64,000 nt of DNA, taken from positions 57,474,001 to 57,538,000 of the forward strand of contig OZ076415.1 in assembly GCA_964187785.1 (NCBI GenBank), read 5' to 3'. Both the position numbers and the translations under genes were made by a program. How positions within the stretch are numbered: the first letter of the stretch is position 1; every line of letters starts with the position of its first letter. Shown one piece after another: positions 153 to 23,400 of this stretch. The DNA is from Amphiscolops sp. MND2022 (taxonomy: Eukaryota). The notes beneath the pieces were generated by a model. The model saw only the letters and a program-made list of their open reading frames with translations. It did no database searches and was not told the origin of the DNA.

Positions 153-207
153 ACAATTTTTTGCCAACTCAGTCAAGGTTCTTAAGGCCAAACTAATTTT
201 CGGTCGT

Positions 208-1125
208 AGCTAGAACTGCGGTCATTTCTGAAGCACTCCAAATGCAACGATGACGAAAACCACCATGACTTGGAGATTCTGAAACAGAACAGTTCCTTGC
301 ACATTTGATCTATTTCTACGAAACAGGATAAAAGCAAAATTCTCATTTTCAAACATTTCGAAGGCATCGGGCCAGGATACGATGTGAAACCTAATCTCTG
401 CATTTTCAGATGAAAATTGCAATCAAAGCGAAAAACAGGTTTCAATAACCAAAGAAAAACATCTTCCAGTCTTCCAGGCAACGAAGTTTTTTGAGGAGTT
501 TTTGAAATGTGCTCAGAAACAGCTTCAAAGTCATGAAAAAGAAAAAACCTAAACAAAAGTTTACCCAAACAGTTCTCAGATTTCAAAGCCAGAGATCTGA
601 AAGACCAGTTTGCACCTCTCAGTCGTCTAAAACATCAGCTAGAACTGCAGACACTCCTGAAGCACTCCAAATGCAAGGATGACCAGGCCTGAAAACCACC
701 ATGACTGGAAATTCTGGAACAGAACACTTTCGTGAACATTTGATCTTTCTCTAAAAACAGGACAAAAGAAAAATTCTCAAACATCTCAAAGGCATCGGCT
801 CAGCGAGGGATTTGAAATTTAGCTCGGCATTTTGCTACTCAAAATTGCAATCAAAAAAGCGAAAAAAAGAGTAAAAACGATAAAAACATCTTCAAATCTT
901 CCAGAAAACGAACTTTTTAGAGTTTTGGAAATGCGCTATTGAAAATTCTCATTCTCAAACATTTCGAAGGCAGCGGTTCAGGAGACGATGTAAAACTCAA
1001 TCTCGACATTTTCCTGCTGAATTTCGCATTCACAAGAAAGCGAAAAAATGGTTCAAACAACAATAAAAAGTCTTCGAATCTTGCAGAAATCAAACTTTTT
1101 GAGGAAATTTTGAAGCGCGCCCTAA
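208..1125. repeat. Diverged tandem duplication (~430-bp unit x2 plus a partial third copy)
   Basis: AGCTAGAACTGC..CTGAAGCACTCCAAATGCAA recurs at ~208 and ~637. ATTCTC..AAACAT(T/C)TC(G/A)AAGGCA recurs at ~340, ~775 and ~950. Confidence 0.75.
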
Positions 1126-1329
1126 CATGAATCAATTCTTTAAACGAACGAAGAATCAGCAACACGAACCTAATAACTACTTACTCGAATCGCAGATAGT
1201 CACTAAGAAGACTATCGGCTGCGAAGTGAGGCAAGCACTTCTTAAGGTTAGAGTCACCCAAGACCAAAACACTTGAGCTAAAGAAATTAAACTAATGTAT
1301 ATTGATATCCCGGAAGAGACACAGACGGA

Positions 1330-1745
1330 GTTATAATGCGAAAAGTATAGTTCACTGAATGTAATGTTTCACCAGAAATTCCAAGAAAACATGCGATTGG
1401 AACCAGTCTAGTGGAGGCTCGTGGCTACTTGAACAGGAAACACAGCTGTTCACCAGGGCTTGAATTGGTTGGGACTCAGATCTTATTACCACAAAATACA
1501 ACTACAGTGTCGTATGTAGAGGTCAATTCAACATACACATTGAGGATTCGCGCTTTGAGGCACCCTTCAGGGTGCCAATAGATTTTGCTGCTGACAAAAT
1601 ATGAATCAATCATGTAAACAAACTAAGAACAAGCAACGTGAACCAACTGAAAACTTACTCGGAGCGCATGAAGTCACTAAGACGATTCATCGCTTACGAA
1701 GCGCGGCAAGAAACCTCTGTAGACTAGAGTCACCCAAGTTATCAG
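1330..1745 (-). pseudogene. SGNH/GDSL hydrolase pseudogene, subunit A (representative copy; no block V found)
   Basis: LGDSS (GDS at 1734-1726), a 68-nt GTAAGT..GTCAG intron (1658-1591) at the same position as in subunit B, then KIYWHPEGCLKARILNVYVELTSTYDTVVVFCGN followed by a frameshift. Confidence 0.75.
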
Positions 1746-1792
1746 GCTAAGGAACGAACAAAAACATTCAATTAACAGATTGAATTATTCTT

Positions 1793-2363
1793 TCAAACAT
1801 TCGACAGGAATGATATACCGAGTTCAACATTGAGGTGAACACCGTCAGCTTCAAAAGGATCATATGGTTCAATTTCCGGTGGAATAACATAAGAAAGTGA
1901 GAGATGTTCATATAGAAGTGTTTTAGTGCTTTGCATCACAACCCTTTCAACATCGGGTCTTTGAAGCAAGCCAATATTATTAACAGTTGTATAAAGAATG
2001 CGAAGTTCAAGCTCAAATTTGAAATTGCAGAGGCTCGTGGCTACTTCAACAGCAGACTCGGCAGTTAACCACGGTTTGAATGTGTGGAGATTCAGATCAT
2101 TATTGCCAGAAAACACAACTACAGTCGTATGAAGAGGCCCATTCAAGATCTTTAATGAAGAATCTCGCTCTGAGGCACTTTTCAGGGTACCAATGGATAT
2201 TGCTGCTGAAACAAAGATGAATCAATTATTTAAACGAACGAAGAACCAGCAACACGAACCCACTAACCACTTACTCGAATCGCAGATAGTCACTAAGAAG
2301 ACTATCGCTTGCGAAGTGAGGCAAGCACTTCTTCAGGTTAGAGTCACCCAAGACCAAAACTCT
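1793..2363 (-). pseudogene. SGNH/GDSL hydrolase pseudogene, subunit B (representative copy; repeated in every array unit)
   Basis: Block I VLVLGDSN (GDS at 2348-2340), a 69-nt GTAAGT..TTTCAG intron (2274-2206), then IHWYPEKCLRARFFIK.LE.ASSYD, a frameshift, block III TVVVF(C/S)GNNDL and block V ADGVHLN (~1849-1832). Confidence 0.85.
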
Positions 2364-5300
2364 TGAGCTAAAGAAAATAAACTAATGTATATTGATATCC
2401 CGGAAGAGACACAGACGGAGTTATAATGCGAAAATATTAGTTACTGAATGTAATGTTTCACCTGAAATTCCAAGAAAACATGAGATTGGAACCAGTCTAG
2501 TGGAGGCTCGTGGCTACTGGAACAGGAAACACAGCAGTTCACCAGGGCTTGAATTGGTTGGGCCTCAGATCTTATTACCACGAAATACAACAACAGTGTC
2601 GTATGTAGAGGTCAATCCAAAATACACATTGAGGATTCGCGCTTTGAGGTAGCCTTCAGGGTGCCAATAGATTTTGCTGCTGACAAAATATGAATCAATC
2701 ATGTAAACAAACTAAGAAAAAGCAACGTGATCCAACTGAGAACTCACTCGGAGCGCATGAAGTTACTAAGACGATTCATCGCTTACGAAGCGCGGCAAGG
2801 AACCTCTGTAGACTAGTGTCACCCAAGTTATCAAGCTAAGGAACGAACAAAAACATTCAATTAACAGATTGAATTATTCTTTCAAACATTCGACAGGAAT
2901 GATATATACCGAGTTCAACATTGAGGTGAACACCGTCAGCTTCAAAATGATCATATGGTTCAATTTCCTGGGGACTAACATAAGAAAGTGAGAGATGTTC
3001 ATATAGAAGTGTTTTAGTGCTTTGCATCACAACCCTTTCAACATCGGGTCTTGGAAGCAAGCCAATATTTTTAACAGTTGTATAAAGATTGCGAAGTTCA
3101 AGCTCAATTTTGAAATTGCAGAGGCTCGTAGCTACTTCAACAGCAGACTCGGCAATTAACCACGGTTTGAATGTGTGGAGATTCAGATCATTATTGCCAC
3201 AAAACACAACTACAGTCGTATGAAGAGGCCAATTCAAGATACTTAATGAAGAATCTCGCTCTGAGGCACTTTTCAAGGTACCAATGGATATTGCTGCTGA
3301 AAAAAAAATGAATCAATTATTTAAACGAACGAAGAATCAGCAACACGAACCTACTAACCACTTACTCGAATCGCAGATAGTCACTAAGAAGACTATCGCT
3401 TGCGAAGTGAGGCAAGCACTTCTTCAGGTTAGAGTCACCCAAGACCAAAACACTTGAGCTAAAGAAAATAAACTAATGTATATTGATATCCCGGAAGAGA
3501 CACAGACGGAGTTATAATGCGAAAAGTTTAGTTACTGAATGTAATGTTTCACCAGAAATTCCAAGAAAACATGAGATTGGAACCAGTCTAGTTGAGGCTC
3601 GTGGCTACTTGAACAGGAAACACAACAGTTCACCAGGGCTTGAATTGGTTGGTCCTCCGATCTTATTACCACAAAATACAACTAAGTGTCGTATGTAGAG
3701 GTCAATCCAACATACACATTGAGGATTCGCGCTTTGAGGCACCCTTCAGGGTGCCAATAGATTTTGCTGCTGACAAAATATGAATCAATCATGTAAACAA
3801 ACTAAGAACAAGCAACGTGAACCAACTGAAAACTTACTCGGAGCGCATGAAGTTACTACGACGATTCATCGCTTACGAAGCGCGGCAAGGAACCTCTGTA
3901 GACTAGAGTCACCCAACTTATCAGGCTAGGGAACGAACAAAAACTTTCAATTAACAGATTGGATTATTCTTTCAAACATTCGACAGGAATGATATATACC
4001 GAGTTCAACATTGAGGTGAACACCGTCAGCCTCAAAAGGATCATATGGATCAATATCCTGGGGACTAACATAAGAAAGTGAGAGATGTTCATATAGAAGT
4101 GTTTTAGTGCTTTGCATCACAACCCTTTCAACATCGGGTCTTGGAAGCAAGCCAATATTTTTAACAGTTGTATAAAGATTGCGAAGTTCAAGCTCAATTT
4201 TGAAGTTGCAGAGGCTCGTGGCTACTTCAACAGCAGACTCGGCAGTTAACCACGGTTCGAATGTGTGGAGATTCAGATCATTATTGCCACAAAACACAAC
4301 TACAGTTGTATGAAGAGGCCAAATCAAGATACTTAATGAAGAATCTCGCTCTGAGGCACTTTTCAGGGTACCAATGAATATTGCTGCTGAAAAAAGATGA
4401 ATCAATTATTTAAACGAACGAAGAACCAGCAACACGAACCTACTAACCACTTACTCGAATCGCAGATAGTCACTAAGAAGACTATCGCTTGCGAAGTGAG
4501 GCAAGCACTTCTTCAGGTTAGAGTCACCCAAGACCAAACACTTGAGCTAAAGAAAATAAACTAATGTATATTGATATCCCGGAATAGACACAGACGGAGT
4601 TATAATGCGAAAAGTTTAGTTACTGAATGTAATGTTTCACCAGAAATTCCAAGAAAACATGAGATTGGAACCAGTCTAGTTGAGGCTCGTGGCTACTTGA
4701 ACAGGAAACAGCAGTTCACCAGGGCTTGAATTGGTTGGTCCTCAGATCTTATTACCACAAAATACAACTAAGTGTCGTATGTAGAGGTCAATCCAACATA
4801 CACATTGAGGATTCGCGCTTTGAGGCACCCTTCAGGGTGCCAATAGATTTTGCTGCTGACAAAATATGAATCAATCATGTAAACAAACTAAGAACAAGCA
4901 ACGTGAACCAACTGAAAACTTACTCGGAGCGCATGAAGTTACTACGACGATTCATCGCTTACGAAGCGCGGCAAGGAACCTCTGTAGACTAGAGTCACCC
5001 AAGTTATCAGGCTAAGGAACGAACAAAAACTTTCAATTAACAGATTGGATTATTCTTTCAAACATTCGACAGGAATGATATATACCGAGTTCAACATTGA
5101 GGTGAACACCGTCAGCCTCAAAAGGATCATATGGATCAATATCCTGGGGACTAACATAAGAAAGTAAGAGATGTTCATATAGAGTGTTTTAGTGCTTTGC
5201 ATCACAACCCTTTCAACATCGGGTCTTGGAAGCAAGCCAATATTTTTAACAGTTGTATAAAGATTGCGAAGTTCAAGCTCAATTTTGAAGTTGCAGAGGC

Positions 5301-8300
5301 TCGTGGCTACTTCAACAGCAGACTCGGCAGTTAACCACGGTTCGAATGTGTGGAGATTCAGATCATTATTGCCACAAAACACAACTACAGTTGTATGAAG
5401 AGGCCAAATCAAGATACTTAATGAAGAATCTCGCTCTGAGGCACTTTTCAGGGTACCAATGAATCTTGCTGCTGAAAAAAGATGAATCAATTATTTAAAC
5501 GAACGAAGAACCAGCAACACGAACCTACTAACCACTTACTCGAATCGCAGATAGTCACTAAGAAGACTATCGCTTGCGAAGTGAGGCAAGCACTTCTTCA
5601 GGTTAGAGTCACCCAAGACCAAACACTTGAGCTAAAGAAAATAAACTAATGTATATTGACATCCCGGAATAGACACAGACGGAGTTATAATGCGAAAAGT
5701 TTAGTTACTGAATGTAATGTTTCACCAGAAATTCCAAGAAAACATGAGATTGGAACCAGTCTAGTTGAGGCTCGTGGCTACTTGAACAGGAAACAGCAAT
5801 ACACCAGGGCTTGAATTGGTTGGTCCTCAGATCTTATTTACCACAAAATACAACTAAGTGTCGTATGTAGAGGTCAATCCAACATACACATTGAGGATTC
5901 GCGCTTTGAGGCACCCTTCAGGGTGCCAATAGATTTTGCTGCTGACAAAATATGAATCAATCATGTAAACAAACTAAGAACAAGCAACGTGAACCAACTG
6001 AAAACTTACTCGGAGCGCATGAAGTTACTACGACGATTCATCGCTTACGAAGCGCGGCAAGGAACCTCTGTAGACTAGAGTCACCCAAGTTATCAGGCTA
6101 AGGAACGAACAAAAACTTTCAATTAACAGATTGGATTATTCTTTCAAACATTCGACAGGAATGATATATACCGAGTTCAACATTGAGGTGAACACCGTCA
6201 GCCTCAAAAGGATCATATGGATCAATATCCTGGGGACTAACATAAGAAAGTAAGAGATGTTCATATAGAGTGTTTTAGTGCTTTGCATCACAACCCTTTC
6301 AACATCGGGTCTTGGAAGCAAGCCAATATTTTTAACAGTTGTATAAAGATTGCGAAGTTCAAGCTCAATTTTGAAGTTGCAGAGGCTCGTGGCTACTTCA
6401 ACAGCAGACTCGGCAGTTAACCACGGTTCGAATGTGTGGAGATTCAGATCATTATTGCCACAAAACACAACTACAGTTGTATGAAGAGGCCAATTCAAGA
6501 TACTTAATGAAGAATCTCGCTCTGAGGCACTTTTCAGGGTACCAATGAATATTGCTGCTGAAAAAAAGATGAATCAATTATTTAAACGAACGAAGAACCA
6601 GCAACACGAACCTACTAACCACTTACTCGAATCGCAGATAGTCACTAAGAAGACTATCGCTTGCGAAGTGAGGCAAGCACTTCTTCAGGTTAGAGTCACC
6701 CAAGACCAAAACACTTGAGCTAAAGAAAATAAACTAATGTATATATCGATATCCCGGAAGAGACACAGACGGAGTTATAATGCGAAATGTTGAGTTACCG
6801 AATGTAATGTTTCACCAGAAATCCCAAGAAAACATGAGATTGGAACCAGTCTAGTGGAGGCTCGTGGCTACTTGAACAGGAAACACGGCAGTTCACCAGG
6901 GCTTGAATTGGTTGGGCCTCAGATCTTCTTACCACAAAATACAACTACAGTGTCGTATATAGACGTCAATCCAACATACACATTGAGGATTCGCGCTTTG
7001 AGGCACCCTTCAGGGTGCCAATAGATTTTGCTGCTGACAAAATATGAATCAATCATGTAAACAAACTAAGAACAAGCAACGTGAACCAACTGAAAACTTA
7101 CTCGGTTCGCATGAAGTTACTAAGACGATTCATCGCTTACGAAGCGCAGCAAGCAACCTCTGTAGACTAGAGTCACCCAAGTTATCATTCTAAGGAACGA
7201 AGAAAAACATTCAATTAACAGATTGAATTATTCTTTCAAACATTCGACAGGAATGATATATACCGAGTTCAACATTGAGGTGAACACCGTCAGCTTCAAA
7301 AGGATCATATGGTTCAATTTCCTGAAGACTAACATAAGAAAGTGAGAGATGTTCATATAGAAGTGTTTTAGTGCTTTGCATCACAACCGTATCAACATCG
7401 GGTCTTGGAAGGAAGCAAGCTAATATTTTTAGCAGTTGTATAAAGATTGCGAAGTTCAAGCTCAATTTTGAAATAGCAGAGGCTCGTGGCTACTTCAACA
7501 GCAGACTCGGCAGTTAACCACGGTTTGAATGTGTGGAGATTCAGATCATCATTGCCACAAAACACAACTACAGTCGTATGAAGAGGCCAATTCAAGATAC
7601 TTAATGAAGAATCTCGCTCTCAGGCGCTTTTCAGGGTACCAATGGATATGGCTGCTGAAAAAAAATATGAATCAATTATTTAAACGAACGAAGAACCAGC
7701 AACACGAACATACTAACCAATTACTCGAATCGCAGATGGTCACTAAGAAGACTATCGCTTGCGAAGTGAGGCAAGCACTTCTTCAGGTTAGCGTCACCCA
7801 AGACCAAAACACTTGAGCTAACGAAAATGAACTAATGTATATTGATATCCCGGAAGAGACACAGAGGGAGTTATAATGCGAAAAGTTTAGTTACTGAATG
7901 TAATGTTTCACCAGAAATTCCAAGAAAACATGAGATTGGAACCAGTCTAGTGGAGGCTCGTGGCTACTTGAACAGGAAACACAGCAATTCACCAGGGCTT
8001 GAATTGGTTGAGCCTCAGATCTTATTACCACAGAATACAACTACAGTGTCGTATGTAGAGGTCAATCCAACATACACATTGAGGATTCGCGCTTTGAGGC
8101 ACCCTTCAGGGTGCCAATAGATTTTGCCGCTGACAAATAATGAATCAATCATGTAAACAAACTAAGAACAAGCAACGTGAACCAACTGAAAACCTACTCG
8201 GAGTGCATGAAGTCACTAAGACGATTCATCGCTTACGAAGCGCAGCAAGCAACCTCTGTAGACTAGAGTCACCCAAGTTATCAGGCTAAGGAACGAAGAA

Positions 8301-11300
8301 AAACATTCAATTAACAGATTGAATTATTCTTTCAAACATTCGACAGGGATGATATATACCGAGTTCAACATTGAGGTGAACACCGTCAGCTTCAAAAGGA
8401 TCATATGGTTCAATTTCCTGAAGACTAACATAAGAAAGTGAGAGATGTTCATATAGAAGTGTTTTAGTGCTTTGCATCACAACCGTATCAACATCGGGTC
8501 TTGGAAGGAAGCAAGCTAATATTTTTAGCAGTTGTATAAAGATTGCGAAGTTCAAGCTCAATTTTGAAATTGCAGAGGCTCGTGGCTACTTCAACAGCAG
8601 ACTCGGCAGTTAACCACGGTTTGAATGTGTGGAGATTCAGATCATTATTGCCACAAAACACAACTACAGTCGTATGAAGAGGCCAATTCAAGATACTTAA
8701 TGAAGAATCTCGCTCTCAGGCGCTTTTCAGGGTACCAATGGATATGGCTGCTGAAAAAAAATATGAATCAATTATTTAAACGAACGAAGAACCAGCAACA
8801 CGAACATACTAACCAATTACTCGAATCGCAGATATTCACTAAGAAGACTATCGCTTGCGAAGTGAGGCAAGCACTTCTTCAGGTTAGAGTCACCCAAGAC
8901 CAAAACACTTGAGCTAAAGAAAATAAACTAATGTATATATCGATATCCCGGAAGAGACACAGACGGAGTTATAATGCGAAATGTTGAGTTACCGAATGTA
9001 ATGTTTCACCAGAAATCCCAAGAAAACATGAGATTGGAACCAGTCTAGTGGAGGCTCGTGGCTACTTGAACAGGAAACACGGCAGTTCACCAGGGCTTGA
9101 ATTGGTTGGGCCTCAGATCTTCTTACCACAAAATACAACTACAGTGTCGTATATAGACGTCAATCCAACATACACATTGAGGATTCGCGCTTTGAGGCAC
9201 CCTTCAGGGTGCCAATAGATTTTGCTGCTGACAAAATATGAATCAATCATGTAAACAAACTAAGAACAAGCAACGTGAACCAACTGAAAACTTACTCGGT
9301 TCGCATGAAGTTACTAAGACGATTCATCGCTTACGAAGCGCAGCAAGCAACCTCTGTAGACTAGAGTCACCCAAGTTATCATTCTAAGGAACGAAGAAAA
9401 ACATTCAATTAACAGATTGAATTATTCTTTCAAACATTCGACAGGAATGATATATACCGAGTTCAACATTGAGGTGAACACCGTCAGCTTCAAAAGGATC
9501 ATATGGTTCAATTTCCTGAAGACTAACATAAGAAAGTGAGAGATGTTCATATAGAAGTGTTTTAGTGCTTTGCATCACAACCGTATCAACATCGGGTCTT
9601 GGAAGGAAGCAAGCTAATATTTTTAGCAGTTGTATAAAGATTGCGAAGTTCAAGCTCAATTTTGAAATAGCAGAGGCTCGTGGCTACTTCAACAGCAGAC
9701 TCGGCAGTTAACCACGGTTTGAATGTGTGGAGATTCAGATCATTATTGCCACAAAACACAACTACAGTCGTATGAAGAGGCCAATTCAAGATACTTAATG
9801 AAGAATCTCGCTCTCAGGCGCTTTTCAGGGTACCAATGGATATGGCTGCTGAAAAAAAATATGAATCAATTATTTAAACGAACGAAGAACCAGCAACACG
9901 AACATACTAACCAATTACTCGAATCGCAGATGGTCACTAAGAAGACTATCGCTTGCGAAGTGAGGCAAGCACTTCTTCAGGTTAGCGTCACCCAAGACCA
10001 AAACACTTGAGCTAACGAAAATGAACTAATGTATATTGATATCCCGGAAGAGACACAGAGGGAGTTATAATGCGAAAAGTTTAGTTACTGAATGTAATGT
10101 TTCACCAGAAATTCCAAGAAAACATGAGATTGGAACCAGTCTAGTGGAGGCTCGTGGCTACTTGAACAGGAAACACAGCAATTCACCAGGGCTTGAATTG
10201 GTTGAGCCTCAGATCTTATTACCACAGAATACAACTACAGTGTCGTATGTAGAGGTCAATCCAACATACACATTGAGGATTCGCGCTTTGAGGCACCCTT
10301 CAGGGTGCCAATAGATTTTGCCGCTGACAAATAATGAATCAATCATGTAAACAAACTAAGAACAAGCAACGTGAACCAACTGAAAACCTACTCGGAGTGC
10401 ATGAAGTCACTAAGACGATTCATCGCTTACGAAGCGCAGCAAGCAACCTCTGTAGACTAGAGTCACCCAAGTTATCAGGCTAAGGAACGAAGAAAAACAT
10501 TCAATTAACAGATTGAATTATTCTTTCAAACATTCGACAGGGATGATATATACCGAGTTCAACATTGAGGTGAACACCGTCAGCTTCAAAAGGATCATAT
10601 GGTTCAATTTCCTGAAGACTAACATAAGAAAGTGAGAGATGTTCATATAGAAGTGTTTTAGTGCTTTGCATCACAACCGTATCAACATCGGGTCTTGGAA
10701 GGAAGCAAGCTAATATTTTTAGCAGTTGTATAAAGATTGCGAAGTTCAAGCTCAATTTTGAAATTGCAGAGGCTCGTGGCTACTTCAACAGCAGACTCGG
10801 CAGTTAACCACGGTTTGAATGTGTGGAGATTCAGATCATTATTGCCACAAAACACAACTACAGTCGTATGAAGAGGCCAATTCAAGATACTTAATGAAGA
10901 ATCTCGCTCTCAGGCGCTTTTCAGGGTACCAATGGATATGGCTGCTGAAAAAAATATGAATCAATTATTTAAACGAACGAAGAACCAGCAACACGAACAT
11001 ACTAACCAATTACTCGAATCGCAGATATTCACTAAGAAGACTATCGCTTGCGAAGTGAGGCAAGCACTTCTTCAGGTTAGAGTCACCCAAGACCAAAACA
11101 CTTGAGCTAACGAAAATAAACTAATGTATATTGATATCCCGGAAGAGACACAGAGGGAGTTATAATGCGAAAAGTTTAGTTACTGAATGTAATGTTTCAC
11201 CAGAAATTCCAAGAAAACATGAGATTGGAACCAGTCTAGTGGAGGCTCGTGGCTACTTGAACAGGAAACACAGCAATTCACCAGGGCTTGAATTGGTTGA

Positions 11301-14047: not shown

Positions 14048-14665
14048 TGAAATCAGCTTTTAGCAGTGGGTTGAAAGCGTTGTGACTCAAACATTTATTT
14101 CAGAACAATCCACTTGAGGTATCTAGAAAAAACGTTACGACATCCCATAAAGCTTTTTGGGTAAATCGCCCTCTGTGGCTACTTTCAGGGCACCAATGGA
14201 TAGTGCTGTTGAAAAATACAAGCTCGGTTTATCCACTAAACAAACGCTGAAGAAAAAACGAACCAAATACTTACTCAAGGAGCGAATTCAAGTAGAGTTT
14301 CTGTTCAGGTTACAGGTAGCGAAATCAAAACCAGTGCGAATTTTGATGACAAGAATTTTAGGAACAAGATGGGCAACAAAGGTAAGCAAGTCCGAATAGA
14401 ACCAAACATTAAATAAAAAAGTGCTAGGGCAAGTAATATTCTCGGCGAGGGGGCGACATAAATGGGAAAATATTGTGCATGCACAGCCAGTGCTGTGCTC
14501 CACGTGGTTCAATTGTTCGAAGCCTTCGTTCATTAGGCTCACCACTGCTTTCTCCAGAGTTCCTGACAAGAACATTAGTTGGGTAGCCATTAGGTCATCG
14601 ACAGTCAACAAAGAGTAAGTCATCAAGCTGTGAGATCTCATAATAAAATTCTTCGGAAGAAGCAA
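14048..14665 (-). pseudogene. Third, unamplified SGNH paralogue (N-terminal half) preceded by a Cys/His-containing reading frame
   Basis: FATCNLNR aligns with LGDSNLKK. It has the same 69-nt GTAAGT..CAACAG intron (14274-14206), then TIHWCPES...LWDVVTFF, and runs directly into the C-terminal SGNH half of the last array unit at ~14047. Confidence 0.6.
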
Positions 14666-14780
14666 CGTAGATCAATGGCTTCTTCGAGCGGTAATGCCTA
14701 ACTATAGCAGTAGTGGCATCGTTGACATCTTGGTGATAATCAACTAAAAGTAAAAAGTCGCCCGACATTGTTTGAGTAAT

Positions 14781-16952
14781 TCATTCGCTCCAATTCTGAA
14801 ATAACGGTGTGTAAGCCATAGACGCGAAAACCTTTGTACTAGGGATGAGATAATGCCGACTGCGAAGATGTCCCGTGCCGCATTCGATAAGAGAAAACCG
14901 ACAGTCCTCAGCTACAGAAGTGAAGCGGTCCTCGAAATTTTTCTCTTCTGAGAATGCAACAGCGTGTTTGTCGCAAAAGTAAATTATCCACAACATGACT
15001 CAAACTTTTAACCGTTCCTTGGACTGAATTCAGTAAAAAATGATTGGCGGACTCGAATCCAAAAGCCGAATTCCTCCAGATTGGCCCTTTACGTCTAACT
15101 TGATCGCAAAGATGTCTCAGAGAATGAAAATTAAAACTTTGTGAATCCTTGCCATAAAGATTCACGAAGTCTAGCTGGAACCTTTCGATCAGGTTTGGGG
15201 CTTCGTTTATATTTTCCGTTGAAACCTTTCAGAAATAACAGCCTTTTAGCGACAGACAATTGATTACACGATTGATGATACTTTTCTTGAACGAAATCTT
15301 TCAAGCAGTAACTGCCGAAGTAAAAAAGAAAAAGCTTGAAATCTCGAGCTTTCCAAAATAATATTTCTGACAGCAACTTGGGACGGCCCTGTGCACATCG
15401 AGGTGCTTTGACACCTTTCAACCGTTTCCCCATTGATGTAGTGTTCCGTTTTGCAGTCGAAGCTAATAGCGCTGTGATGATTGATTTGGCACAACCCAAA
15501 AACACCTGGTGCATAGCATCGATTGGAACATCGTCACGTATGCTGAACAGTTCGTCTATGAACCAGCGTCCTTTAATACCTCTGACTATTTCATTTTTGC
15601 CTTCAGCAACACTAGCATCTTTCAAAAGTTCATCTTTGTGGCGTTGAATGATTTCCTCATCACAAGGATATAAGTGACGATGATTCTCATGAAAACCACG
15701 AGTGTAGCAATAGATGCACCTATAAAGAAGTTTTCTAAACTCGTTGTGTTGGCGGTTTTTCTTTCACGCAAAACCAATTGACAAAAAAGGTGTCAGAGAA
15801 AAACGGGTCATATGTTTGAGAGAAAAAAAGGTCAGTTTAGGCACAGTGCCAAATGTTCAAGCAGAAATTTTGCTTTACAGTGGAGTTGTTTATATTTCGA
15901 TGTTTCCCAACGAATGTCGTGATCTGAGACACTACCCTTTCTGAGCTTGCAGATGACAGCCAACCCGAGCATTCCACATTATTTTTTAAGAGAAAGTCGG
16001 TCAGTTGAAAGTTAAATTTATATAGATAACTTACCCATAATATCCGTTGAACTGGACAACATTGAGTGAAGGTGCTTTCGCTATCATGTCCTATATGAAA
16101 TCTTTCACTTCAACGTTGAAATGTTTCGACAACAAACTGCTGTATACCCCGAGGGAAATGCCACTCAATTCTCGTCTTATTATTGGATCAACATTCGAAA
16201 AGTTGGGTTTTGTGCTGCCTTTCCACAATGCGACCTGCATCATAATGTGTGAAGCTGTTCTCCGGATACGTGGCATGTTATCAATAAGAACCCAGAAAGG
16301 CCAAAACACTTTTTTCGATGATCGAAACGGTGTCGCACCATCAGTGTTTAGGAAGATAAAGGTTTTGTCACCACACAAAACATCTTCATTTCGCTCAATA
16401 TTTATCATTTCCCCCCTTGGACTTTAGATCTCGAAACCATCTGCGACGTTCACAGACCTTCGATGACACATGTCTGACAGGTCATTATTAGGTTTTGGGA
16501 TAACTAACTTGAGTTCACAGAGCTCTCGAACAGCACTATCTGCGAGTCTATGACGTACCGCGAAGTCGCAAAGTTTTTTTCCGCAAATGTTCAACCGTAA
16601 TGTCTGACTTTTCAAACAGTACCAGCTCATCGGAAGAACTGTCGAAAATGTTCTGACGGTCCGTTTCCTGACAGTTCGTTTCCTGTGGTATAGTGAACTC
16701 CAAAAAACTGGAGAGGTGCAACGGTGTTGAACATCGAGCGTTTGGTATCGGGTTAAAGGCTGCACTGCTAGAAGATGTTGGTTCTTCACTTTCACAAAAT
16801 TCGTTATCGCTCAACTCACCAATGGGTATTTCAATCTCGTCGGAAGAAACCTGATCGGAGTCCGAACTGTTTTTACAAAATAATGTATTGCTCGAAGTCG
16901 ACTGTCTAAGTTTTTTACCACGACTAGTAGCATATCGTCCGGAAACACGCAT
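14781..16952 (-). pseudogene. CACTA/EnSpm-type (Tnp2/Transposase_21-like) DDE transposase, multiply frameshifted
   Basis: Motifs occur in canonical order: FAVRHRLADSAVREL; IFLNTDGATPFRSSKKVFWPFW..VALWKGSTKP; CIYCYTRG..YP; RGIKG..VPIDAMHQVFLGCAK; WKARDFKLFLFYFG; LYGKDSQSFNFHSLRHLCDQVRRKGPIW..SAFGFES. Confidence 0.88.
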
Positions 16953-17099
16953 TAAAGAATGATCTTGTTGTTGTTCTAGTGATGTGAAAGTATTCGAAAG
17001 TCGTTTTCTGAACGTCCTAGACTTCCGTTTTGCTGCCGCGGAACTTTCAATTCGGAAGGTCCCTTTCCAGCTAAATTTTTCGCTTCTGACCTTGTTCGA

Positions 17100-17675
17100 C
17101 TACAGAGGACTAACGTGCCCTGGCCATGAAATTGGACATTGGGACAGACAGTTGATATTGTATTCGCCGAAGGTACTTAAGACCGTACTTTACAGTAATT
17201 TCCTCACTTTTTGTGAAAGAACGCAGTGTTTTCGAAGTTATTATATTATTCTCGCTGCGTACATAGAGACAATTGGGGAAGCACGAGTGGTTAACGAAAG
17301 ACAACGGTCCTAGCATTAATTCTTCGCCTCTCCTCAGGAAAACTGACACATTAGCATCCTCTGGAAGATCTTCCTTCTCTTGAAATTCTGCCAAAATCCC
17401 TTTAACAGGAATTTCAGTTCTTGCATGAATGTCAGACAAAGCGAAAACCCCTAAATTAGTAAACTTTTGCGGTGGTAAGTAATCGACATGTAGAATTTCG
17501 AAACTTGGTAAGGTCTTTTGTATTCTTGCCTCAAATTGTTTATCAGAGTGGAATTTATATTCTGACACCTCCCAGGCTCCAGAACTTTGTTCGACTTGAC
17601 GACATCCGAATCAATTGCTTCTCTAGTCGCCACTGCATCTGCCAGTGCTCATTGCCTCCAAGTGAAGGTGCTCAT
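17100..17675 (-). pseudogene. Suv4-20/KMT5B-like SET-domain histone methyltransferase, intronless, frameshifted
   Basis: FEIL..GILAEF..LMLGPLSFVNHSCFPNC..TLRSFTKSEEITVKYG. After a 1-nt shift it reads FGEYNINCLSQC (post-SET), and upstream is DAVATREAID..SNKV. This parallels the SUV4-20 pattern LWLGPAAFINHDCRPNC..EEISCYYG..FFGENNEFCEC. Confidence 0.85.
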
Positions 17676-17827
17676 TGTGAACCAACAAACAAGAAACTGA
17701 AAACTCATTGTTCAAAATAATTTAGATGCCCTAAAATTCTTTAAAAGTTACCTACTTTCAAAGTACATGATGGACAGTAAATTAAGTTCGTAATCGCCAG
17801 TACAACGAATTAGGAAGATTTTTCCCG

Positions 17828-18450
17828 GTTAAAACTTAAACTGTTAAACTGCTGAATAGTGGAAACAGAAACACCAAGTTGCTGCCCGAAAATGGAACCT
17901 GTATATTCATGTGATTTTTCATATTCCCTGATACGATATAAAGAACATTCAATTGACAACCGGGTAATGATGTGACTTGAGTGTTGACCCGACTCAATGC
18001 ATATTAGCAAATTATGTAAATGATACGAAAAGCGTTTTTCAACCAATGCAGCCAGTGCTGCACTGATATCTCGATAAGTCCAACACTAACAATTGACGAT
18101 ATGTGTGACATTTTCATGCCAATGAGCACACCGACATTGCCCCATTTTACCCTCTATCCGTATCATTAAGGGAAACATTTGTTCCATTAGTTCAATCTGA
18201 ACAGAGAGGCACTTATGCTAGGAAATATCTCATTTAGCCGCAACTGTTGCGACATGAAGACGAAAACACTTGACATTATCACCAAAGTATCTAGAGCCGT
18301 GATTTACTGTTCTTCATGTTTTGAAAAAAAAACTGGGGAACGCCACCTGTCAATCAAGGAAAGTTTTGGAGGCAATTTCAAAATTTTTACTGGTATTCTG
18401 CTCTGAGGCAGCGCTGGTTCTCATCAATAGAAAGTGCTAGCGTTCGATGA
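17828..18450 (-). pseudogene. Partial degenerate duplicate of the BEN-domain gene (end of exon 1, coiled-coil exon, following intron)
   Basis: 17828-18210 aligns with 19511-19910. TTCAG|IELMEQMFPLMIRIEGK corresponds to TTCCAG|VELMEQMLRSMMRMENK. Confidence 0.7.
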
Positions 18451-18770
18451 AACTAACAAATGGTACAAGTAAGATGAAGTAGCACATTGAACTTTTATTC
18501 GCTATTTCAGCGAACGCATGAGAAGAAATCAATTATCAAGGTACATGTTAGACGTTCAGTTAGGTTGGTTTTGATCAGTAGGACGAGATAAGAACTAGTT
18601 TATAAACAACTAGGATCGAAAATTTAGTTTTCATTTCCCCGAAAAATCAAAAGAGCAATGTTAAGTTTTGAGGCTTGCAACCAAATTTGGAGTATTAAAA
18701 GTCTTTTGGATGTACGACTTCAGATGTTATTTTGGAAAAAAAGTTCTGCGGGTGGGGCGTCACCTTTTTT

Positions 18771-20488
18771 TTACATCGTTTCACTGTTGTTTGTTGGCGG
18801 AGTGGACAGGGTCGGTTTCTTCTTCGGTAATTTGGTCCTGTTCTTCATTTCCGTCCCAAGCCCGTTCACAATGTTGCGGGACTTCACATAGCACCCGGAA
18901 TAAAGGCAAACGCACTCTGAACAAAAAATGGAAATAGTTTTTCTGTCAAAGCAAAACGACTGTTAGGTATGAACAAAGCTCTCGATCGAGGAGGCTGGAA
19001 TCATCTAACCCCTGAATAACGCTTTTCGCGTTGGGGTCATTGGACTGCGAGGCACATCCATGAACTCTAAGTCCTTGCCGGGGGACATGATGTTAATAAT
19101 CAGTTCTTTCCTGGACCACAGCTTTCGAGCAATGTTTCTCCCGTACAAAGTGGGAACATCACCAGGACAATCCAGGAGATCGTCTCCGTTGAACATTTTG
19201 CGAACACGCTCCCCGATGGATGCAGGAGTATAATGGTGGTTTTTTTGCATCCACTCCATTATCAGAGCTTGAGTTTTCGCCTAACAAGAAACTTATACAT
19301 AACATTTATTCAACATAACACCTTGTTACAGCGATAGCGACAAGTTCTGCAATGAAGCACTTAAAGCTTATCTCAACTTTCACTCTCAGAAAGACCAGTC
19401 TTGCACTGAGAAAGGTACTTTTATCAACCTAACCAGGAACTCACAGATGAGGCAATAAGTCTGTTAATACTCAAGGGACAACCTTAAAAACCTTTACAAA
19501 AAATTGAAAGGTTAAAACTTAAAGTGTTAAACTGCTGAATGGTGGAAACCGAAACACCAAATTGAAGCCCGAACATGGAACCTGTATATTCATGTGATTT
19601 TTCAAATTCCCTGATACCTTACAAAGAACTTTTAACTGACAACCGGGTTATGATGTATGTCGTGAGTGTTGACTAGACGTAATGCATATTAACAAAATAG
19701 GTAAATGACATGTGAAACGTTTTTCAACCAATGCAGCCAGTGCTGCGTTGATATCTCGATAAGTCCTACACTAACAATTAACGATATGTCTTTGACATTC
19801 TTACGCCAACGAGTATCGCAGGCGTCATGAGCACATCGCCATTTTGTTCTCCATCCGCATCATAGAGCGAAGCATTTGTTCCATCAATTCAACCTGGAAA
19901 AGCAATTGTGCGAAGAAATACCCTAATTAGACTTCAGTTGAATTTCAATCGCATACCACTTTAGAATTGTCCACAGCAGTTGCTTGCGGAGTAGTCAAAG
20001 TCGTATCCAAACACTTCCGTTTGGGTTCGGGCTCCAAGATATCATCCAACTCATTATCTGAGAATGAGTGGTCTGCTTGATGCTGTGACAGGGGACTCTG
20101 GAATTTATCAGTCTCTACTTGGCGATCGGCCCCGAGTAAAATGTTGGAGAGGTTGATATCCTCACCCGATTCAAACCTCTCCATGAGTTCGGAGGCTTCT
20201 TTTTTCTTGCGTTTGACGTCGGCATTGGTTCCAACGAACCAAACTTTTCCCGCGAATATTCCTTTCTTACAACGAATGTTCAATTGATCCGACTTCGCTA
20301 CACCTATGCGCTCTACTAAATCCTATCCCACGATACTCTGTGACTTGTAGTCGAGCGTCACAAAGGTATCATCTTGCGGGAATCGAACGATGACGGCTCG
20401 GTCTTTATCACGGAACTCTTGGAAGCCGCGGTTCGGGCGAGTCAAGCCGAAATAAGGTTTCAGTGTTGTAATCGATAATGCTTTTCAT
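18771..20488 (-). pseudogene. Spliced BEN/DUF4806-like domain gene (transposon accessory protein)
   Basis: Exons ~20488-19957, ~19890-19805, 19280-19010 and 18916-18771 have GT-AG borders. The spliced C-terminus reads PTLYGRNIARKLWSRKELIINIMSPGK..PRSPMTPTRKALFR|ECVCLYSGCYVKSRNIVNGLGTEMKNR. Exon 1 has an in-frame TAG and a frameshift. Confidence 0.65.
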
Positions 20489-21790
20489 CTCAAGGAAAAC
20501 TTTTCAGGACTTTCAGTTGTTTCCAAAAGAAATTGCTTTGGTACCCACAACAAACTTGAAATCCAGATACTGGAAACATTTCTAGTATCAATAAAATATT
20601 CTCCTGAGCGGCACAAAGTTTCTGCTTTAGGGGAACAAAAACCATTACCTTCAATACAGTGATAATATCAGACAATGAATCAAATAACTGCAAATAAGGG
20701 TGCATTTCGTGCTCGGAAACAGCTTCAACAGTTCGGGTAGAGCGTTTTGGGCCACATGGGATTGCGTTTTTTGAACCTCAGCCCTCTTGAGAAAAGCGCA
20801 ATTTCGACTATAACGTCGAAATTCTGATATTGCGCACCAATTTCCATCCTCTGATTCATCCTTAGTAAAATTCAATATACTTCGGAAATACCGGCAAAAG
20901 TTCGGATATAGAGTGCTGGGACAAATGGGAGCACTTGTTTTCGAACCTCCGCCGTAGTGAAACGTATTTTACTTTGAATATAACGTCAACAATTTGCATA
21001 TAGCATTTCTAGTTTTTGAACATCCTTAGAATACCTAGGATACCTTTTTGGTGAAACGGGTCAAAAATTCGGATTCTATTGGATAATGTTATTGGAGGAT
21101 AAAACCTTTGATAAAACCTATAATTGAAGGATAAAATCTATAATAACGGAACTCTTGGAAGCCGCGGTTCGGACGAGTCAAGCTGAAATTAGGTTTCAGT
21201 GTTGTAATTGATAATGCTTTTCATCTCAAGGAAAACTTTTCAGGACTTTCAGTTGTTTACAAAAGAAATTGCTTTGGTACCCACAACAAACTTGAAATCC
21301 AGATACTTGAAACGTTTCTAGTATCAATAAAATATTCCCCTGAGCGGCACAAAGTTTCTGCTTTGGGGGAACAAAAACCATTACCTTCAATACAGTGATA
21401 ATATCAGACAATGAATCAAATAACTGCAAATAAGGGTGCATTTCGTGCTCGGAAACAGTTTCAACAGTTCGGGTAGTGCGTTTTGGGCCACATGGGATTG
21501 CGTTTTTTGAACCTCGGCCCTCCTGAGAAAAGCGCAATTTCGACTATAACGTCGAAATTTTGATATTGCGCACCAATTTCGATCCTCCGATTCATCCTTA
21601 GTAAAATTCAATATACTTCGGAAATACCTGTAAAAGTTCGTATATAGAGTGCTGGGACAAATGGGAACACTTGTTTTCGAGCGTCCGCCGTAGTGAAACG
21701 TTTTTTACTTTGAATATACGTCAACAATTTGGATATAGCATTTCTAGTTTTTTGAACATCCACCTTTTTAGTGAAACGTGTCAAAAATTC
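20413..21790. repeat. ~736-bp tandem duplication covering the 5' region of the BEN gene
   Basis: GGAACTCTTGGAAGCCGCGGTTCGG occurs at ~20413 and ~21149, followed by ~600 bp of high identity. Paired ORFs 20490/21226 and 20651/21387 are near-identical. Confidence 0.92.
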
Positions 21791-22319
21791 GGATTCTATT
21801 GGATAAAGTTATTGGAGGATAAAACCTATAATTAGATGAGAAATGAGAATTTTGTAGTCTCAGTGCCAAAAGAAATCGAATGAAATGACCTCTTAGTCTA
21901 GTCCGGTATTGTATGTTACGCTAAAAAAGGAACTACTCCTTTAGTTGAGTTCCCTGGGCCAAATGGTAATTTGACACTCTTAAATATTCGTAGAACTTTG
22001 TTAAACTAATTTGGTCAGTTCGTGTGGGTTGAAAAAAGGTCACTATTAGAGGTGCACCGGACAGGAAAATTTGTGTCCGGCTGGATAACCGGACAGGACT
22101 GATTGAAGCTGGATACCGGCCGGACCGGACATTTTCCTCAACTATAACCCATGACAGGCTGTTTTTAGATTTGGCAACGAGTATGACGAAACGCAAAGAA
22201 AACGTTTGCTCTATACTATTGAACATTTTTTCTTCAAAATCAATATGCCCAAAATATTTACCGTTGGTGAAATGGTCAAAAAAGGCAATAATCGGGACAA
22301 GCTAATGAGTATAGGAGAC

Positions 22320-22658
22320 AAACAAGACGGGAACGTCCAAAGTTGGCGCCATACCTAAGGCTCAAAAAGCGCAAAGTTTTTGAAAACGAGAAAATTTTTT
22401 AAATCTCACAATGCCGACAAAAGGAGGTGGGGAAAGCCTTGCAGTGCCAAAAAATTGGAAAGAAAGAGCCTTCTGCTTTGCAATGGTTTTGTTTTTTCTG
22501 TTACAGGGGTTTTATATGCGTTCAAGATCAAGTACTAAGTACGTTTGGTTAAAGTACACAGAGCACTAAAATTGGTAAATATGGGTGAGGTATTTGGTCT
22601 GACAAAAATAGCCACTGTAATAGTCGGGCACTTTTCTCAAGAAAAGCGCTGACTAAAA
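22320..22658 (+). mobile_element. Non-autonomous Helentron/DINE-1-like (HINE) element, copy 1
   Basis: Begins AACAAGACGGGAACGTCCAAAGTTGGCGCC and ends with the hairpin GTCGGGCACTTTTCTCAAGAAAAGCGCTGACTAAAA. Both termini are shared with many copies in the window. Confidence 0.7.
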
Positions 22659-23328: not shown

Positions 23329-23400
23329 ACAAGCCGGGAACGGCCCAAGTTGGCGCCCTGCTCAAGACACTTGAGTTTAAAAAAGACCAAGAGAAAATTT
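23329..23400 (+). mobile_element. HINE-family terminal fragment
   Basis: ACAAGCCGGGAACGGCCCAAGTTGGCGCC terminus only. Confidence 0.55.

What the first reader, a model, noticed from the sequence alone, without database searches (positions are those of the whole stretch)
1130..21865. Candidate giant CACTA/EnSpm transposon carrying a chromatin toolkit (Suv4-20-like SET, BEN) plus SGNH hydrolases
Seen: BEN gene, partial BEN duplicate, SET gene, CACTA-type transposase and SGNH genes lie head-to-tail on one strand with only short gaps, share similar decay, and have no host gene between them. Established: animal CACTA/EnSpm elements often carry a BEN/DUF4806-like accessory ORF. Inference: the SET and SGNH genes are cargo of the same element. 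I do not know of a described animal CACTA family with this gene set, so it may be an undescribed cargo-carrying element that modifies chromatin at its own loci.
Basis: partly seen in the sequence, partly recalled or inferred. Interest (0 to 1): 0.88.

Follow-up and report, generated by a model that had tools for sequence, protein, structure and literature searches.

The report
Giant SET-transposase DNA transposon, dead copy
This stretch is one dead, 25.6-kb copy of a large cut-and-paste DNA transposon whose transposase is fused to a histone-methyltransferase-like (Suv4-20-type SET) domain and which also carries an esterase gene, here blown up into a 13-kb tandem array; the gene set appears undescribed for this transposon superfamily.

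Summary
The finding lies inside one transposon copy running from 275 bp left of the window to window 25337 (25.6 kb). It has imperfect terminal inverted repeats (5'-CCCTAG...CTAGGG-3') and a 2-bp target duplication, and it sits antisense between two exons of a UBXN7-like host gene. Four other copies in the same assembly share the order: 175-bp subterminal repeats, two upstream ORFs, SET-transposase, SGNH gene(s), 3' repeats. Five ends have unrelated flanks.

- SET is not separate cargo. It is the N-terminal domain of a CMC/CACTA-like DDE transposase, and intact 980-1008-aa fusions exist elsewhere.
- The "SGNH genes" are a ~12-unit tandem array (1124-14046) of a spliced SGNH gene that is single-copy in another copy. 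A homologous gene also lies directly downstream of a distant intact relative.
- BEN is not confirmed by Pfam, PDB profile or modelling. Only language-model features of a distant homologue point to BEN/DUF4806.
- The window copy is dead (frameshifts, stops, secondary insertions).
- Family assignment: CMCT clade, not CACTA in the strict sense.

The scan had already noted SET-CACTA fusions on other DNA of this genome. I found no published description. Novelty: new variant of a known kind.

The parts
1..1123 (-). 3' terminal region of the element. The 3' terminus itself lies 275 bp left of the window (L005:7533) and reads inward CCCTAGTCGAGGTTGC.
   Evidence: The 3' terminal 109 nt of copy L010 match L005 7533-7641 at 79%, starting exactly at the terminus. 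TIR alignment with the 5' end.
1124..14046 (-). Tandem array of ~11.85 units of 1086-1098 bp. Each unit holds one spliced SGNH-hydrolase gene copy (block I exon LGDSNL, short intron with GTAAGT donor, second exon with CGNNDL and DGVHLN) plus one more decayed paralogue. Only the 3 leftmost units keep an uninterrupted second exon. A 2-unit higher-order repeat spans 6561-10948.
   Evidence: Depth 8-11x that of the single-copy neighbour. 54% aa identity to the single-copy gene of L004/L008.
14047..14506 (-). Spacer between the transposase C-terminus and the first SGNH unit.
   Evidence: The C-terminal motif MNEGFEQLN aligns with the ...EGFEHN stop-proximal end of P0017 and L008.
14507..17684 (-). 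Pseudogene of the SET-transposase fusion. SET at 17113-17610; Ser/acidic-rich linker at 16551-17099; DDE core with D (LNTDGATPF, 16094-16423), C(2)C (YRCIYCY, 15134-15763), and H(3)H plus E (FNFHSLRHL...FGFESAN, 14911-15228). At least 4 frame changes and several stops. The frame breaks right after the SET catalytic Tyr.
   Evidence: tblastn colinearity with P0002, P0013, P0017 and P0039. Pfam. PDB. Alignment A2.
17827..18227 (-). Partial internal duplicate of 19510-19920 (81% identity).
19008..19280 (-). Upstream ORF-B, conserved core (NG.NLL..PGDVPTLYGRNIAR.LWSKEELMN.IMSPGK...PMTPTRKALFRG). Possible BEN-like module, unproven.
   Evidence: Homologous to L004:8117-8722 and P0164-P0166. pN 0.25 against pS 0.82. 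Atlas BEN lead for the L002 homologue only.
19948..20322 (-). Upstream ORF-A, no recognisable domain.
   Evidence: Matches L001 7198-7487. pN 0.29 against pS 0.82 versus L004:7270-7701. No Pfam hit.
20434..23689 (.). Block specific to the window copy, probably secondary insertions. It holds a 736-bp tandem duplication (20407-21107 / 21143-21827) and short dispersed repeats, such as 22320-22400, that also occur at 6 other places in the window.
   Evidence: Absent from L001, L008, L010 and L011. Pieces match host flank of L012 and other window sites.
23697..24339 (.). 5' subterminal tandem repeats (periods 29, 60 and 175 bp; 19 copies of TTTTAGACGTTATT). Expanded to ~5 kb in L001.
24340..25337 (-). 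5' terminal region ending in the TIR (+ strand ...CACTTTCAACTAGGG at 25337). Contains a 232-bp insertion (25038-25269) that L006 lacks.
   Evidence: Identical terminus with three unrelated flanks in the window, L006 and L009.
25338..25339 (.). Right copy of the 2-bp target-site duplication (CG). The left copy is the last 2 nt before L005:7533.
   Evidence: The second complete copy has TA/TA.
25641..26378 (+). Host exon with a UBX domain. A UBX7_N exon lies 1.76-2.18 kb left of the window, so the element sits antisense between the two.
   Evidence: Pfam UBX E=1.3e-16 and UBX7_N E=1.8e-6. Gene calls.

Best explanation
The finding is the inner part of one decayed copy (window -275 to 25337, 25.6 kb, minus strand) of a large autonomous cut-and-paste DNA transposon of the CMC/CMCT (CACTA-Mirage-Chapaev-Transib) clade, inserted antisense between exons of a UBXN7-like host gene.

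Shown:
- The family has imperfect ~33-60-nt TIRs beginning 5'-CCCTRG, makes 2-bp TSDs, and carries long subterminal tandem repeats.
- Gene order: two conserved upstream ORFs; a DDE transposase whose N-terminus is a Suv4-20/KMT5-like SET domain; a downstream spliced SGNH hydrolase gene with all catalytic blocks.
- In this copy the SGNH gene pair was amplified after insertion into a ~12-unit array, the transposase is broken, and foreign repeats have inserted.

Inferred (not shown):
- The transposase excises and integrates the element at the CCCT...AGGG ends, probably after binding the subterminal repeats.
- The SET domain methylates a lysine, either H4K20-like on chromatin or a non-histone partner. 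That could recruit double-strand-break repair, or set chromatin state, at donor or target sites.
- The SGNH esterase and the upstream (possibly BEN-like DNA-binding) protein act as accessory factors. They may come from alternative splicing of one transcript, as in maize En/Spm.
- The array grew by unequal crossing-over and has no function.
For: - One element. The window, L001/L006, L004/L007, L008/L010/L012 and L009 are all contigs of assembly ERZ25074608 at ~100-111x (200x for L009). They share the same segment order at 65-99% identity.
- 5' end. The terminus CCCTAGTTGAAAGTGC is identical in three copies with unrelated flanks.
- 3' end. The terminus is shared by L010, L011 and the window copy, again with unrelated flanks, and is an inverted repeat of the 5' end at 25/33 nt plus GGCTAATTT.
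- TSD. Both copies with two ends in hand have a 2-bp match, CG/CG and TA/TA; chance is about 0.4%.
- SET-transposase fusion. Colinear tblastn. Intact 980-1008-aa SET+DUF1258/Tnp2 proteins exist. The SET core is invariant across the family and closest to SUV420H1/2.
- CMCT signature D..D..C(2)C..H(3)H..E read in P0017, P0013 and the window, against the definition in PMC12730594.
- SGNH. GDS/G/GNND/DxxH are conserved. AF2 model pLDDT 82; all top PDB matches are SGNH hydrolases at TM~0.69. A homologous gene lies directly downstream of the distant L002 transposase (E=8e-10). Three more SGNH homologues sit on contigs whose lengths equal those of transposase hits.
- Selection. dN/dS is about 0.11-0.15, or pN far below pS, for the five coding segments with 73 or more aligned codons; a sixth piece (14 codons) is too short to count.
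- Array..
Against: - Pfam transposase hits are all below the curated cut-offs (Transposase_21 12-24 bits against 28.6; DUF1258 30 against 33.1).
- The termini are not CACTA.
- Only two copies have both ends in hand, so the 2-bp TSD rests on n=2.
- The window copy also has a 21/25-nt flanking direct repeat that the TSD model does not explain.
- The window copy's 3' region (1-1123) does not resemble the 3' repeat arrays of the L001-type copies.
- No RNA data are available, so splicing and expression are untested.
- No enzymatic activity is tested. The H of the NHSC motif varies in 4 of 11 family members.
- L002's own termini could not be found.
Confidence: 0.85

Rival explanations
1. Not one element: a satellite of host SGNH genes happens to lie next to an unrelated SET-transposase pseudogene and other repeats.
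For: The scan's notes report a separate 52-kb SGNH satellite elsewhere in the genome (unchecked). Another SGNH-like ORF sits next to a Penelope element at ~45.8 kb in this window. SGNH unit number varies between copies: 1, ~4.5 and ~12.
Against: - The order transposase then SGNH holds in four other copies and in the distant L002 lineage.
- TIRs and the TSD enclose the array.
- The array ORF has no tblastn match to the 45.8-kb SGNH.
- The SGNH block I exon lacks its own ATG in all copies, so it depends on upstream exons.
Confidence: 0.05
2. A segmental duplication of a chromosomal region rather than transposition. The shared ends are duplication breakpoints.
For: L001 and L004 are 99.3% identical over 17.9 kb, yet each is truncated at a different end. 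L009 holds an internal 9.39-kb duplication at 99.9% identity. The window copy is flanked by a 21/25-nt direct repeat.
Against: - The same exact terminal nucleotide occurs at three 5' ends and three 3' ends, with six unrelated flanks.
- The two ends are inverted repeats of each other.
- 2-bp TSDs are present.
- The block encodes a DDE transposase.
- The insertion lies between exons of a host gene.
Confidence: 0.05
3. A domesticated host gene cluster: a SETMAR-like SET-transposase host gene with neighbouring SGNH genes, no longer mobile.
For: Purifying selection on all ORFs. SET-transposase fusions are known as host genes (SETMAR; PMC9062482, listed).
Against: - Multiple dispersed copies with TIRs and TSDs.
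- Near-identical young copies (98-99%).
- The window copy and most others are broken.
- Many paralogous clusters in several assemblies.
Confidence: 0.03

Closest known systems
EnSpm/CACTA and its relatives Mirage and Chapaev (CMC; the CMCT clade of Kojima 2025, PMC12730594)
   Same: [quoted passage not shown] Weak Pfam similarity to Tnp2 (PF02992) and DUF1258. TIRs with long subterminal repeat arrays. Short TSD within the clade's 2-5 bp range. A second gene downstream of the transposase, as in En/Spm. Enlarged 16-20-kb multi-ORF EnSpm families are known in a red alga (PMC6431247).
   Different: Termini are 5'-CCCTAG...CTAGGG-3', not CACTA...TAGTG. The TSD is 2 bp, not 3. The transposase has an N-terminal Suv4-20-like SET domain. 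The downstream gene is an SGNH hydrolase, not a TnpA-like protein. Size is 25-29 kb.
SET-encoding DNA transposons: HarbingerS and MuDR families of oomycetes (Kojima & Jurka 2014, cited in PMC12730594)
   Same: A DNA transposon that carries a SET histone-lysine-methyltransferase module, thought to act on the element's own chromatin.
   Different: Different superfamilies and hosts. I could not read those Repbase reports, so whether their SET is fused to the transposase is unchecked. Here the SET is Suv4-20/KMT5-like and is translationally fused to a CMC-type transposase in an animal genome.
SETMAR (Metnase), the primate SET + Hsmar1 mariner transposase fusion (PMC9062482, PMC4198141)
   Same: The architecture is SET domain N-terminal to a DDE transposase. 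A link between lysine methylation and DNA-break handling has been proposed for it.
   Different: SETMAR is a single-copy domesticated host gene made by exon capture, with a different SET type and a Tc1/mariner transposase. Here the fusion is the transposase of a multi-copy, TIR-bounded, recently active transposon family.
SGNH/GDSL esterases of retroelements: ORF1 of CR1/L2/RTEX LINEs, ORF3 of bdelloid Vesta LTR elements, Athena/Terminon PLEs (PMC3905857, PMC5408684). Also the SGNH gene captured by a Helitron in platyfish (PMC4021074).
   Same: A transposable element maintains an SGNH hydrolase with intact S-G-N-H catalytic residues as an accessory protein of unknown substrate.
   Different: Those are retroelements, or in the Helitron case a captured host gene. 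Here the esterase is a conserved gene of a DDE cut-and-paste transposon. Its nearest structural matches are bacterial acylhydrolases and PAF-acetylhydrolase Ib. No sequence similarity was found to the Penelope-linked SGNH in the same window.

Membership tests
CMC/CMCT clade of DDE transposons | [quoted passage not shown] | tested here: met
   P0017 has INLDGASVF, LVADMPA, SCCFCT, FNFHTMRHL and FAFESAH. P0013 is likewise. The window retains LNTDGATPF, YRCIYCY, FNFHSLRHL and FGFESAN. This rests on motif reading, not a phylogeny.
CMC/CMCT clade of DDE transposons | 2-5-bp TSD and TIRs | tested here: met
   2-bp TSD in both complete copies (CG/CG, TA/TA). Imperfect TIR, 25/33 nt plus a further conserved block.
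EnSpm/CACTA in the strict sense | Termini 5'-CACTA...TAGTG-3' (5'-CA..TG-3' in most CMCT lineages) | tested here: not met
   Termini are CCCTAG/CCCTGG...CTAGGG in six ends of five copies.
EnSpm/CACTA in the strict sense | 3-bp TSD | tested here: not met
   A 3-bp match fails in both complete copies (CCG against CGA; CTA against TAG). A 2-bp match fits.
EnSpm/CACTA in the strict sense | Pfam Transposase_21 (Tnp2) above the gathering score | tested here: not met
   12.5-24.1 bits against a cut-off of 28.6. DUF1258 scores 30.0 against 33.1.
Mirage/Chapaev or another named CMC lineage | Placement in a DDE-core phylogeny with Repbase references | not testable with these tools
   No Repbase or Dfam sequences are available. 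The DUF1258 similarity and the 2-bp TSD are only hints.
Suv4-20 / KMT5 SET methyltransferases | SET domain most similar to KMT5B/C, with the SAM-binding NHxCxPN motif, the catalytic Tyr and a post-SET Cys cluster | tested here: met
   Pfam SET E=2e-10. The best PDB hits are only SUV420H2/H1, E 8e-18 to 3e-14. N144, S146, C147, N150 and Y178 are invariant and C190/C192/H198 nearly so across 11 members. In the window copy the post-SET part is lost to a frameshift.
Suv4-20 / KMT5 SET methyltransferases | H4K20 methyltransferase activity | not testable with these tools
   Needs biochemistry.
SGNH/GDSL hydrolases | Four conserved blocks with catalytic Ser (GDS), Gly, Asn (GxND) and Asp-x-x-His, on the SGNH fold | tested here: met
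   Blocks are conserved in alignment A3 and in all window units. AF2 pLDDT 82, pTM 0.83. 134 PDB matches at E<=0.001, and the top 50 shown are SGNH-fold proteins or designed scaffolds built on that fold. The Pfam GDSL_2 hit is only sub-threshold (17.6 against 32.9 bits).
BEN / DUF4806 domain proteins | Significant match to the BEN (PF10523) or DUF4806 profile, or a BEN fold | tested here: inconclusive
   No Pfam hit at E<=10 for any upstream ORF of the window, L004, L008 or L002. No BEN chain in a PDB profile search. The AF2 model is unusable, pLDDT 45. The Atlas gives nothing for L004 ORF-B, best score 0.56. For the L002 upstream ORF it gives BEN clusters at 0.89 with 183-184 shared features and DUF4806 at 0.83. 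L002 ORF against L004 ORF-B is only E=0.002.

The most novel reading that the evidence does not exclude
This is an undescribed clade of CMC-type DNA transposons, recently active in this invertebrate genome and present in others. In it the transposase needs its own catalytically active Suv4-20-like SET domain, which would write a lysine-methyl mark (for example H4K20me) at excision or integration sites to steer break repair or chromatin state. It would work together with a dedicated SGNH esterase and a BEN-like DNA-binding partner made from the same transcription unit.
Probability: 0.25. Interest if true: 0.8.

Novelty: new variant of a known kind. Interest (0 to 1): 0.6.

Why it matters
Transposons that carry their own chromatin-modifying enzyme are rare. 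They bear directly on how mobile DNA negotiates host silencing and DNA repair.

Here a histone-methyltransferase-type domain is part of the transposase itself, in a young multi-copy family. It is a natural, still-mobile counterpart of the domesticated primate gene SETMAR, so it could show what such a fusion does for transposition before domestication.

A conserved SGNH esterase in a DDE transposon extends an accessory enzyme so far documented mainly in retroelements, plus one Helitron capture of a host gene. That suggests its role is not tied to RNA intermediates.

The copy in this window also shows how a transposon gene can seed a 13-kb satellite inside a host intron.

For annotation: the SET, SGNH and UBX-flanking ORFs here should not be called as host chromatin or lipase genes.

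Tried and rejected
- Inverted repeats within the window and CACTA-type ends: none. The true 3' end lies outside the window.
- L001:19961 as the 3' terminus: rejected, because L004 and L008 continue together beyond it.
- The L006 17623-17761 inverted terminal copy as the 3' TIR: rejected, because the sequence behind it is unlike the element.
- A long (21-28-nt) TSD: not reproduced in the second complete copy.
- Two look-ups of ORFs at the window's left edge failed. A 57-aa ORF worked.
- TIR search in L002: nothing convincing.
- BEN tests by Pfam, PDB profile and AF2: negative or unusable.
- Similarity between the array SGNH and the Penelope-linked SGNH at 45.8 kb: none.
- RNA evidence: no RNA run is available, only four runs of one sample.
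- The 5' subterminal 14-mer in the 3' region of the window copy: absent.
- The search of earlier findings by sequence: blank, which carries no information.
- The 158-bp repeat at 26.8-27.1 kb looked like an extension of the element via L004. It lies beyond the host UBX exon and the terminus, so I treat it as an unrelated satellite.

Full report
**1. What is in the window**

ORF positions showed a ~1.09-kb periodicity. Repeat analysis and self-BLAST show that 1124-14046 is a tandem array of ~11.85 units of 1086-1098 bp at 94-100% identity. TRF missed it because its period limit is 500 bp. There are no N runs in the window.

On the minus strand each unit encodes a ~150-aa frame with the motifs CGNNDL and DGVHLN.

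On the minus strand of 14.5-20.4 kb lie several stop-free pieces:
- a SET domain at 17113-17610 (Pfam E=2e-10);
- pieces with weak Tnp2 similarity;
- pieces that hit nothing.

**2. SET and transposase are one gene**

An exhaustive phmmer search with the SET piece found 201 relatives. Some are long proteins with an N-terminal SET domain followed by Transposase_21/DUF1258: P0013 (1038 aa), P0017 (1006 aa) and P0039.

These map colinearly onto window 17487-14968. The closer relative P0002 maps from 17684. The C-terminal motif places the end of the gene near 14507.

A further search found several intact 980-1008-aa fusions, 37-57% identical to P0017. All come from unannotated ENA assemblies and none carries a name.

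Properties of the SET domain:
- The SET core (LGxF, LMLGPxSFxNxSCxPN, the Tyr of ITVxY, and a post-SET CxCxxxxxH cluster) is invariant or nearly so across 11 members.
- The only significant solved relatives are SUV420H2/H1, that is KMT5C/B.

Properties of the transposase:
- It shows the D..D..C(2)C..H(3)H..E pattern that PMC12730594 gives as the signature of the CACTA-Mirage-Chapaev-Transib clade.
- Its Pfam scores stay below the curated cut-offs.

In the window copy the frame changes at least four times. The SET frame breaks right after the catalytic Tyr.

**3. It is one transposon with defined ends**

The window's own contig and four paralogous loci all come from one assembly, ERZ25074608, at ~100-111x depth.

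L001 is colinear with the window from the 175-bp repeats, through two upstream ORF segments and the SET-transposase, to an SGNH unit, at 65-80% identity. L004 is 99.3% identical to L001, and L008 is 95-97% identical.

The 5' end:
- Extending L001 shows that similarity with the window stops at window 25337.
- The same terminal nucleotides, CCCTAGTTGAAAGTGC on the element strand, abut three unrelated flanks in the window, L006 and L009. They recur in L012.

The 3' end:
- L010 and L011 are 98.4% identical up to a common point with unrelated flanks.
- Read inward, that end (CCCTGGTCGAAGTTGCCGCGAAGTTTTACATGC) is an imperfect inverted repeat of the 5' end.
- The same 3' terminus occurs 275 bp left of the window, at L005:7533.

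The window copy therefore spans -275 to 25337, or 25.6 kb. The copy on ctg180727 spans 29.1 kb. Both have a 2-bp flanking match, CG/CG and TA/TA, and a 3-bp match fails in both.

A UBX7_N ORF lies left of the element and a UBX ORF lies right of it, both on the plus strand. The element therefore lies antisense, most likely within an intron of a UBXN7-like gene.

**4. The SGNH gene**

In the distant element L002 (a different assembly, with an intact transposase), the frame directly downstream of the transposase reads GDSNL ... PGF ... CGNND ... DPAHLN. It is homologous to the window's array ORF (E=8e-10).

In the window units and in L008, block I sits in an upstream exon that ends at a GTAAGT-type donor. 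No copy has an ATG before it.

Eleven homologues were found. Three of them lie on contigs whose lengths equal those of contigs carrying transposase homologues.

Evidence for the fold and the catalytic residues:
- All four catalytic blocks are conserved.
- The AlphaFold model is confident (pLDDT 82, pTM 0.83).
- Its PDB matches are SGNH hydrolases, including PAF-acetylhydrolase Ib at TM ~0.69.

Unit number differs between copies: one in L008, about 4.5 in L001/L004, and about 12 in the window. So the window's array is a post-insertion amplification.
- It contains a 2-unit higher-order repeat with 100%-identical units.
- Only 3 of 12 units keep blocks III and V in one frame.
- Contig word depth over the array is 8-11 times that of the adjacent single-copy segment in all four runs. 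The tool warns that this is not a strict copy number.

**5. The upstream ORFs and the BEN claim**

Two segments are conserved between subfamilies: ORF-A at 19948-20322 and ORF-B at 19008-19280.

ORF-B has only three other homologues, all from this genome. Its core is conserved.

Tests for BEN:
- Pfam: no BEN or DUF4806 hit at E<=10.
- PDB profile search: none.
- AlphaFold model: too poor to use, pLDDT 45.
- Atlas features for L004 ORF-B: nothing, best score 0.56.
- Atlas features for the L002 upstream ORF: BEN clusters at 0.89 with 183-184 shared features, and DUF4806 at 0.83. By the tool's own calibration this is a lead only.
- L002's ORF aligns with ORF-B only weakly (E=0.002).

BEN-like is therefore possible but unproven. 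No paper in the library links BEN to EnSpm/CACTA.

**6. Selection**

I compared the window subfamily with the L001-type subfamily by Nei-Gojobori counts on locally aligned codons.

| Segment | Codons | pN | pS | dN/dS |
|---|---|---|---|---|
| SET | 114 | 0.176 | 0.872 | synonymous sites saturated |
| Transposase, piece 1 | 155 | 0.177 | 0.685 | 0.11 |
| Transposase, piece 2 | 14 | 0.122 | 0.655 | 0.09 (too few codons to count) |
| SGNH, exon 2 | 119 | 0.278 | 0.716 | 0.15 |
| ORF-B | 73 | 0.246 | 0.817 | saturated |
| ORF-A | 100 | 0.292 | 0.822 | saturated |

Local alignment favours conserved stretches, but the contrast is large. All of these behaved as functional genes while the subfamilies diverged.

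**7. Decay of this copy**

- Frameshifts and stops in the transposase.
- A 232-bp insertion near the 5' end.
- A 3.2-kb block (20434-23689) that is absent from other copies and contains dispersed repeats.
- A 3' region unlike that of the L001-type copies.

Reads also show an allele in which 87 bp at 15519-15607 are replaced by 14 nt.

**8. Comparison with what is known**

- SET genes in DNA transposons are reported for HarbingerS and MuDR of oomycetes (PMC12730594).
- Enlarged multi-ORF EnSpm families are reported in a red alga (PMC6431247).
- SGNH esterases are reported in LINE, LTR and Penelope-like retroelements, and there is one Helitron capture (PMC3905857, PMC5408684, PMC4021074).
- SETMAR is a domesticated SET-mariner fusion.

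I found no description of a CMC-type transposase fused to a Suv4-20-like SET domain, nor of a DDE transposon with a conserved SGNH gene. Repbase and Dfam could not be searched.

Earlier notes of this scan had already flagged SET-CACTA fusions at three other places in this genome, and a 52-kb SGNH satellite.

**9. Verdict**

The central inference of a single element is correct and now rests on termini, TSDs, repeated colinearity and selection. The element belongs to the CMCT clade but fails the CACTA-specific features (CACTA ends, 3-bp TSD).

Mechanistic roles for SET, SGNH and the upstream protein are inference only.

Novelty: new variant of a known kind. Interest is moderate to high for the family and low for this particular dead copy.

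Noticed in passing
L005 7505-7532 (window -303 to -276) and window 25338-25358: The window copy is flanked by a 21/25-nt direct repeat (CGACTGAT[ATAT]CTGACTGCTATAT). None of 2000 shuffles reach its score. It is absent from the second complete copy. It is either a pre-existing host tandem duplication at the target or an aberrant long duplication.
   Followed up: partly
L006 17623-17761: An inverted, 74-82% similar copy of the terminal ~147 nt (CCCTAATCAAAAGCGC...) lies 1.9 kb outside the L001/L006 copy. The sequence behind it is unlike the element. It may be a related non-autonomous element.
   Followed up: partly
window 25641-26378 (+) and L005 5632-6048 (+): UBX and UBX7_N ORFs of a UBXN7-like host gene flank the 25.6-kb insertion. 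Whether the gene is still spliced across it is unknown.
   Followed up: partly
L005 1118-4015 (window about -6690 to -3793), minus strand: A LINE with RVT_1 and Exo_endo_phos_2 ORFs lies left of the host UBX7_N exon.
   Followed up: no
window 22320-22400: A short dispersed repeat (~55-85 nt, 82-88% identity) is also found near 25428, 35850, 44902, 47162, 50130 and 59024, and in the host flank of L012. It looks like a SINE or MITE-like family.
   Followed up: no
window 26766-27065: A 158-bp tandem repeat (1.9 copies) is expanded to ~1.5 kb next to the 5'-truncated copy L004/L007. It appears to be an independent satellite family.
   Followed up: partly
L009 7079-11421 and 16470-20810: A SET-containing 4.3-kb segment is duplicated 9.39 kb apart at 99.86% identity, on a contig with twice the usual depth (200x). 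This may be a tandem or collapsed arrangement of a shorter element variant.
   Followed up: no
window 15519-15607: Contigs of all four runs support an alternative form in which 87 bp are replaced by 14 nt (TTCATTTTTGCCTT), at about single-copy depth. It is probably the other haplotype.
   Followed up: no
window -712 and -671 (L005 7096-7150): Two inverted copies of the 5' subterminal 14-mer TTTTAGACGTTATT lie ~400 nt outside the 3' terminus.
   Followed up: no
window 6561-10948: The SGNH array has a higher-order structure. Units 7659-8754 and 9853-10948 are 100% identical, and 6561-7658 and 8755-9852 are ~99% alike, which indicates a recent 2.19-kb duplication.
   Followed up: yes
window 45831-46423: The SGNH/GDSL-like ORF reported beside a Penelope element has no detectable protein similarity to the array SGNH ORF (tblastn E<=1).
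   Followed up: partly
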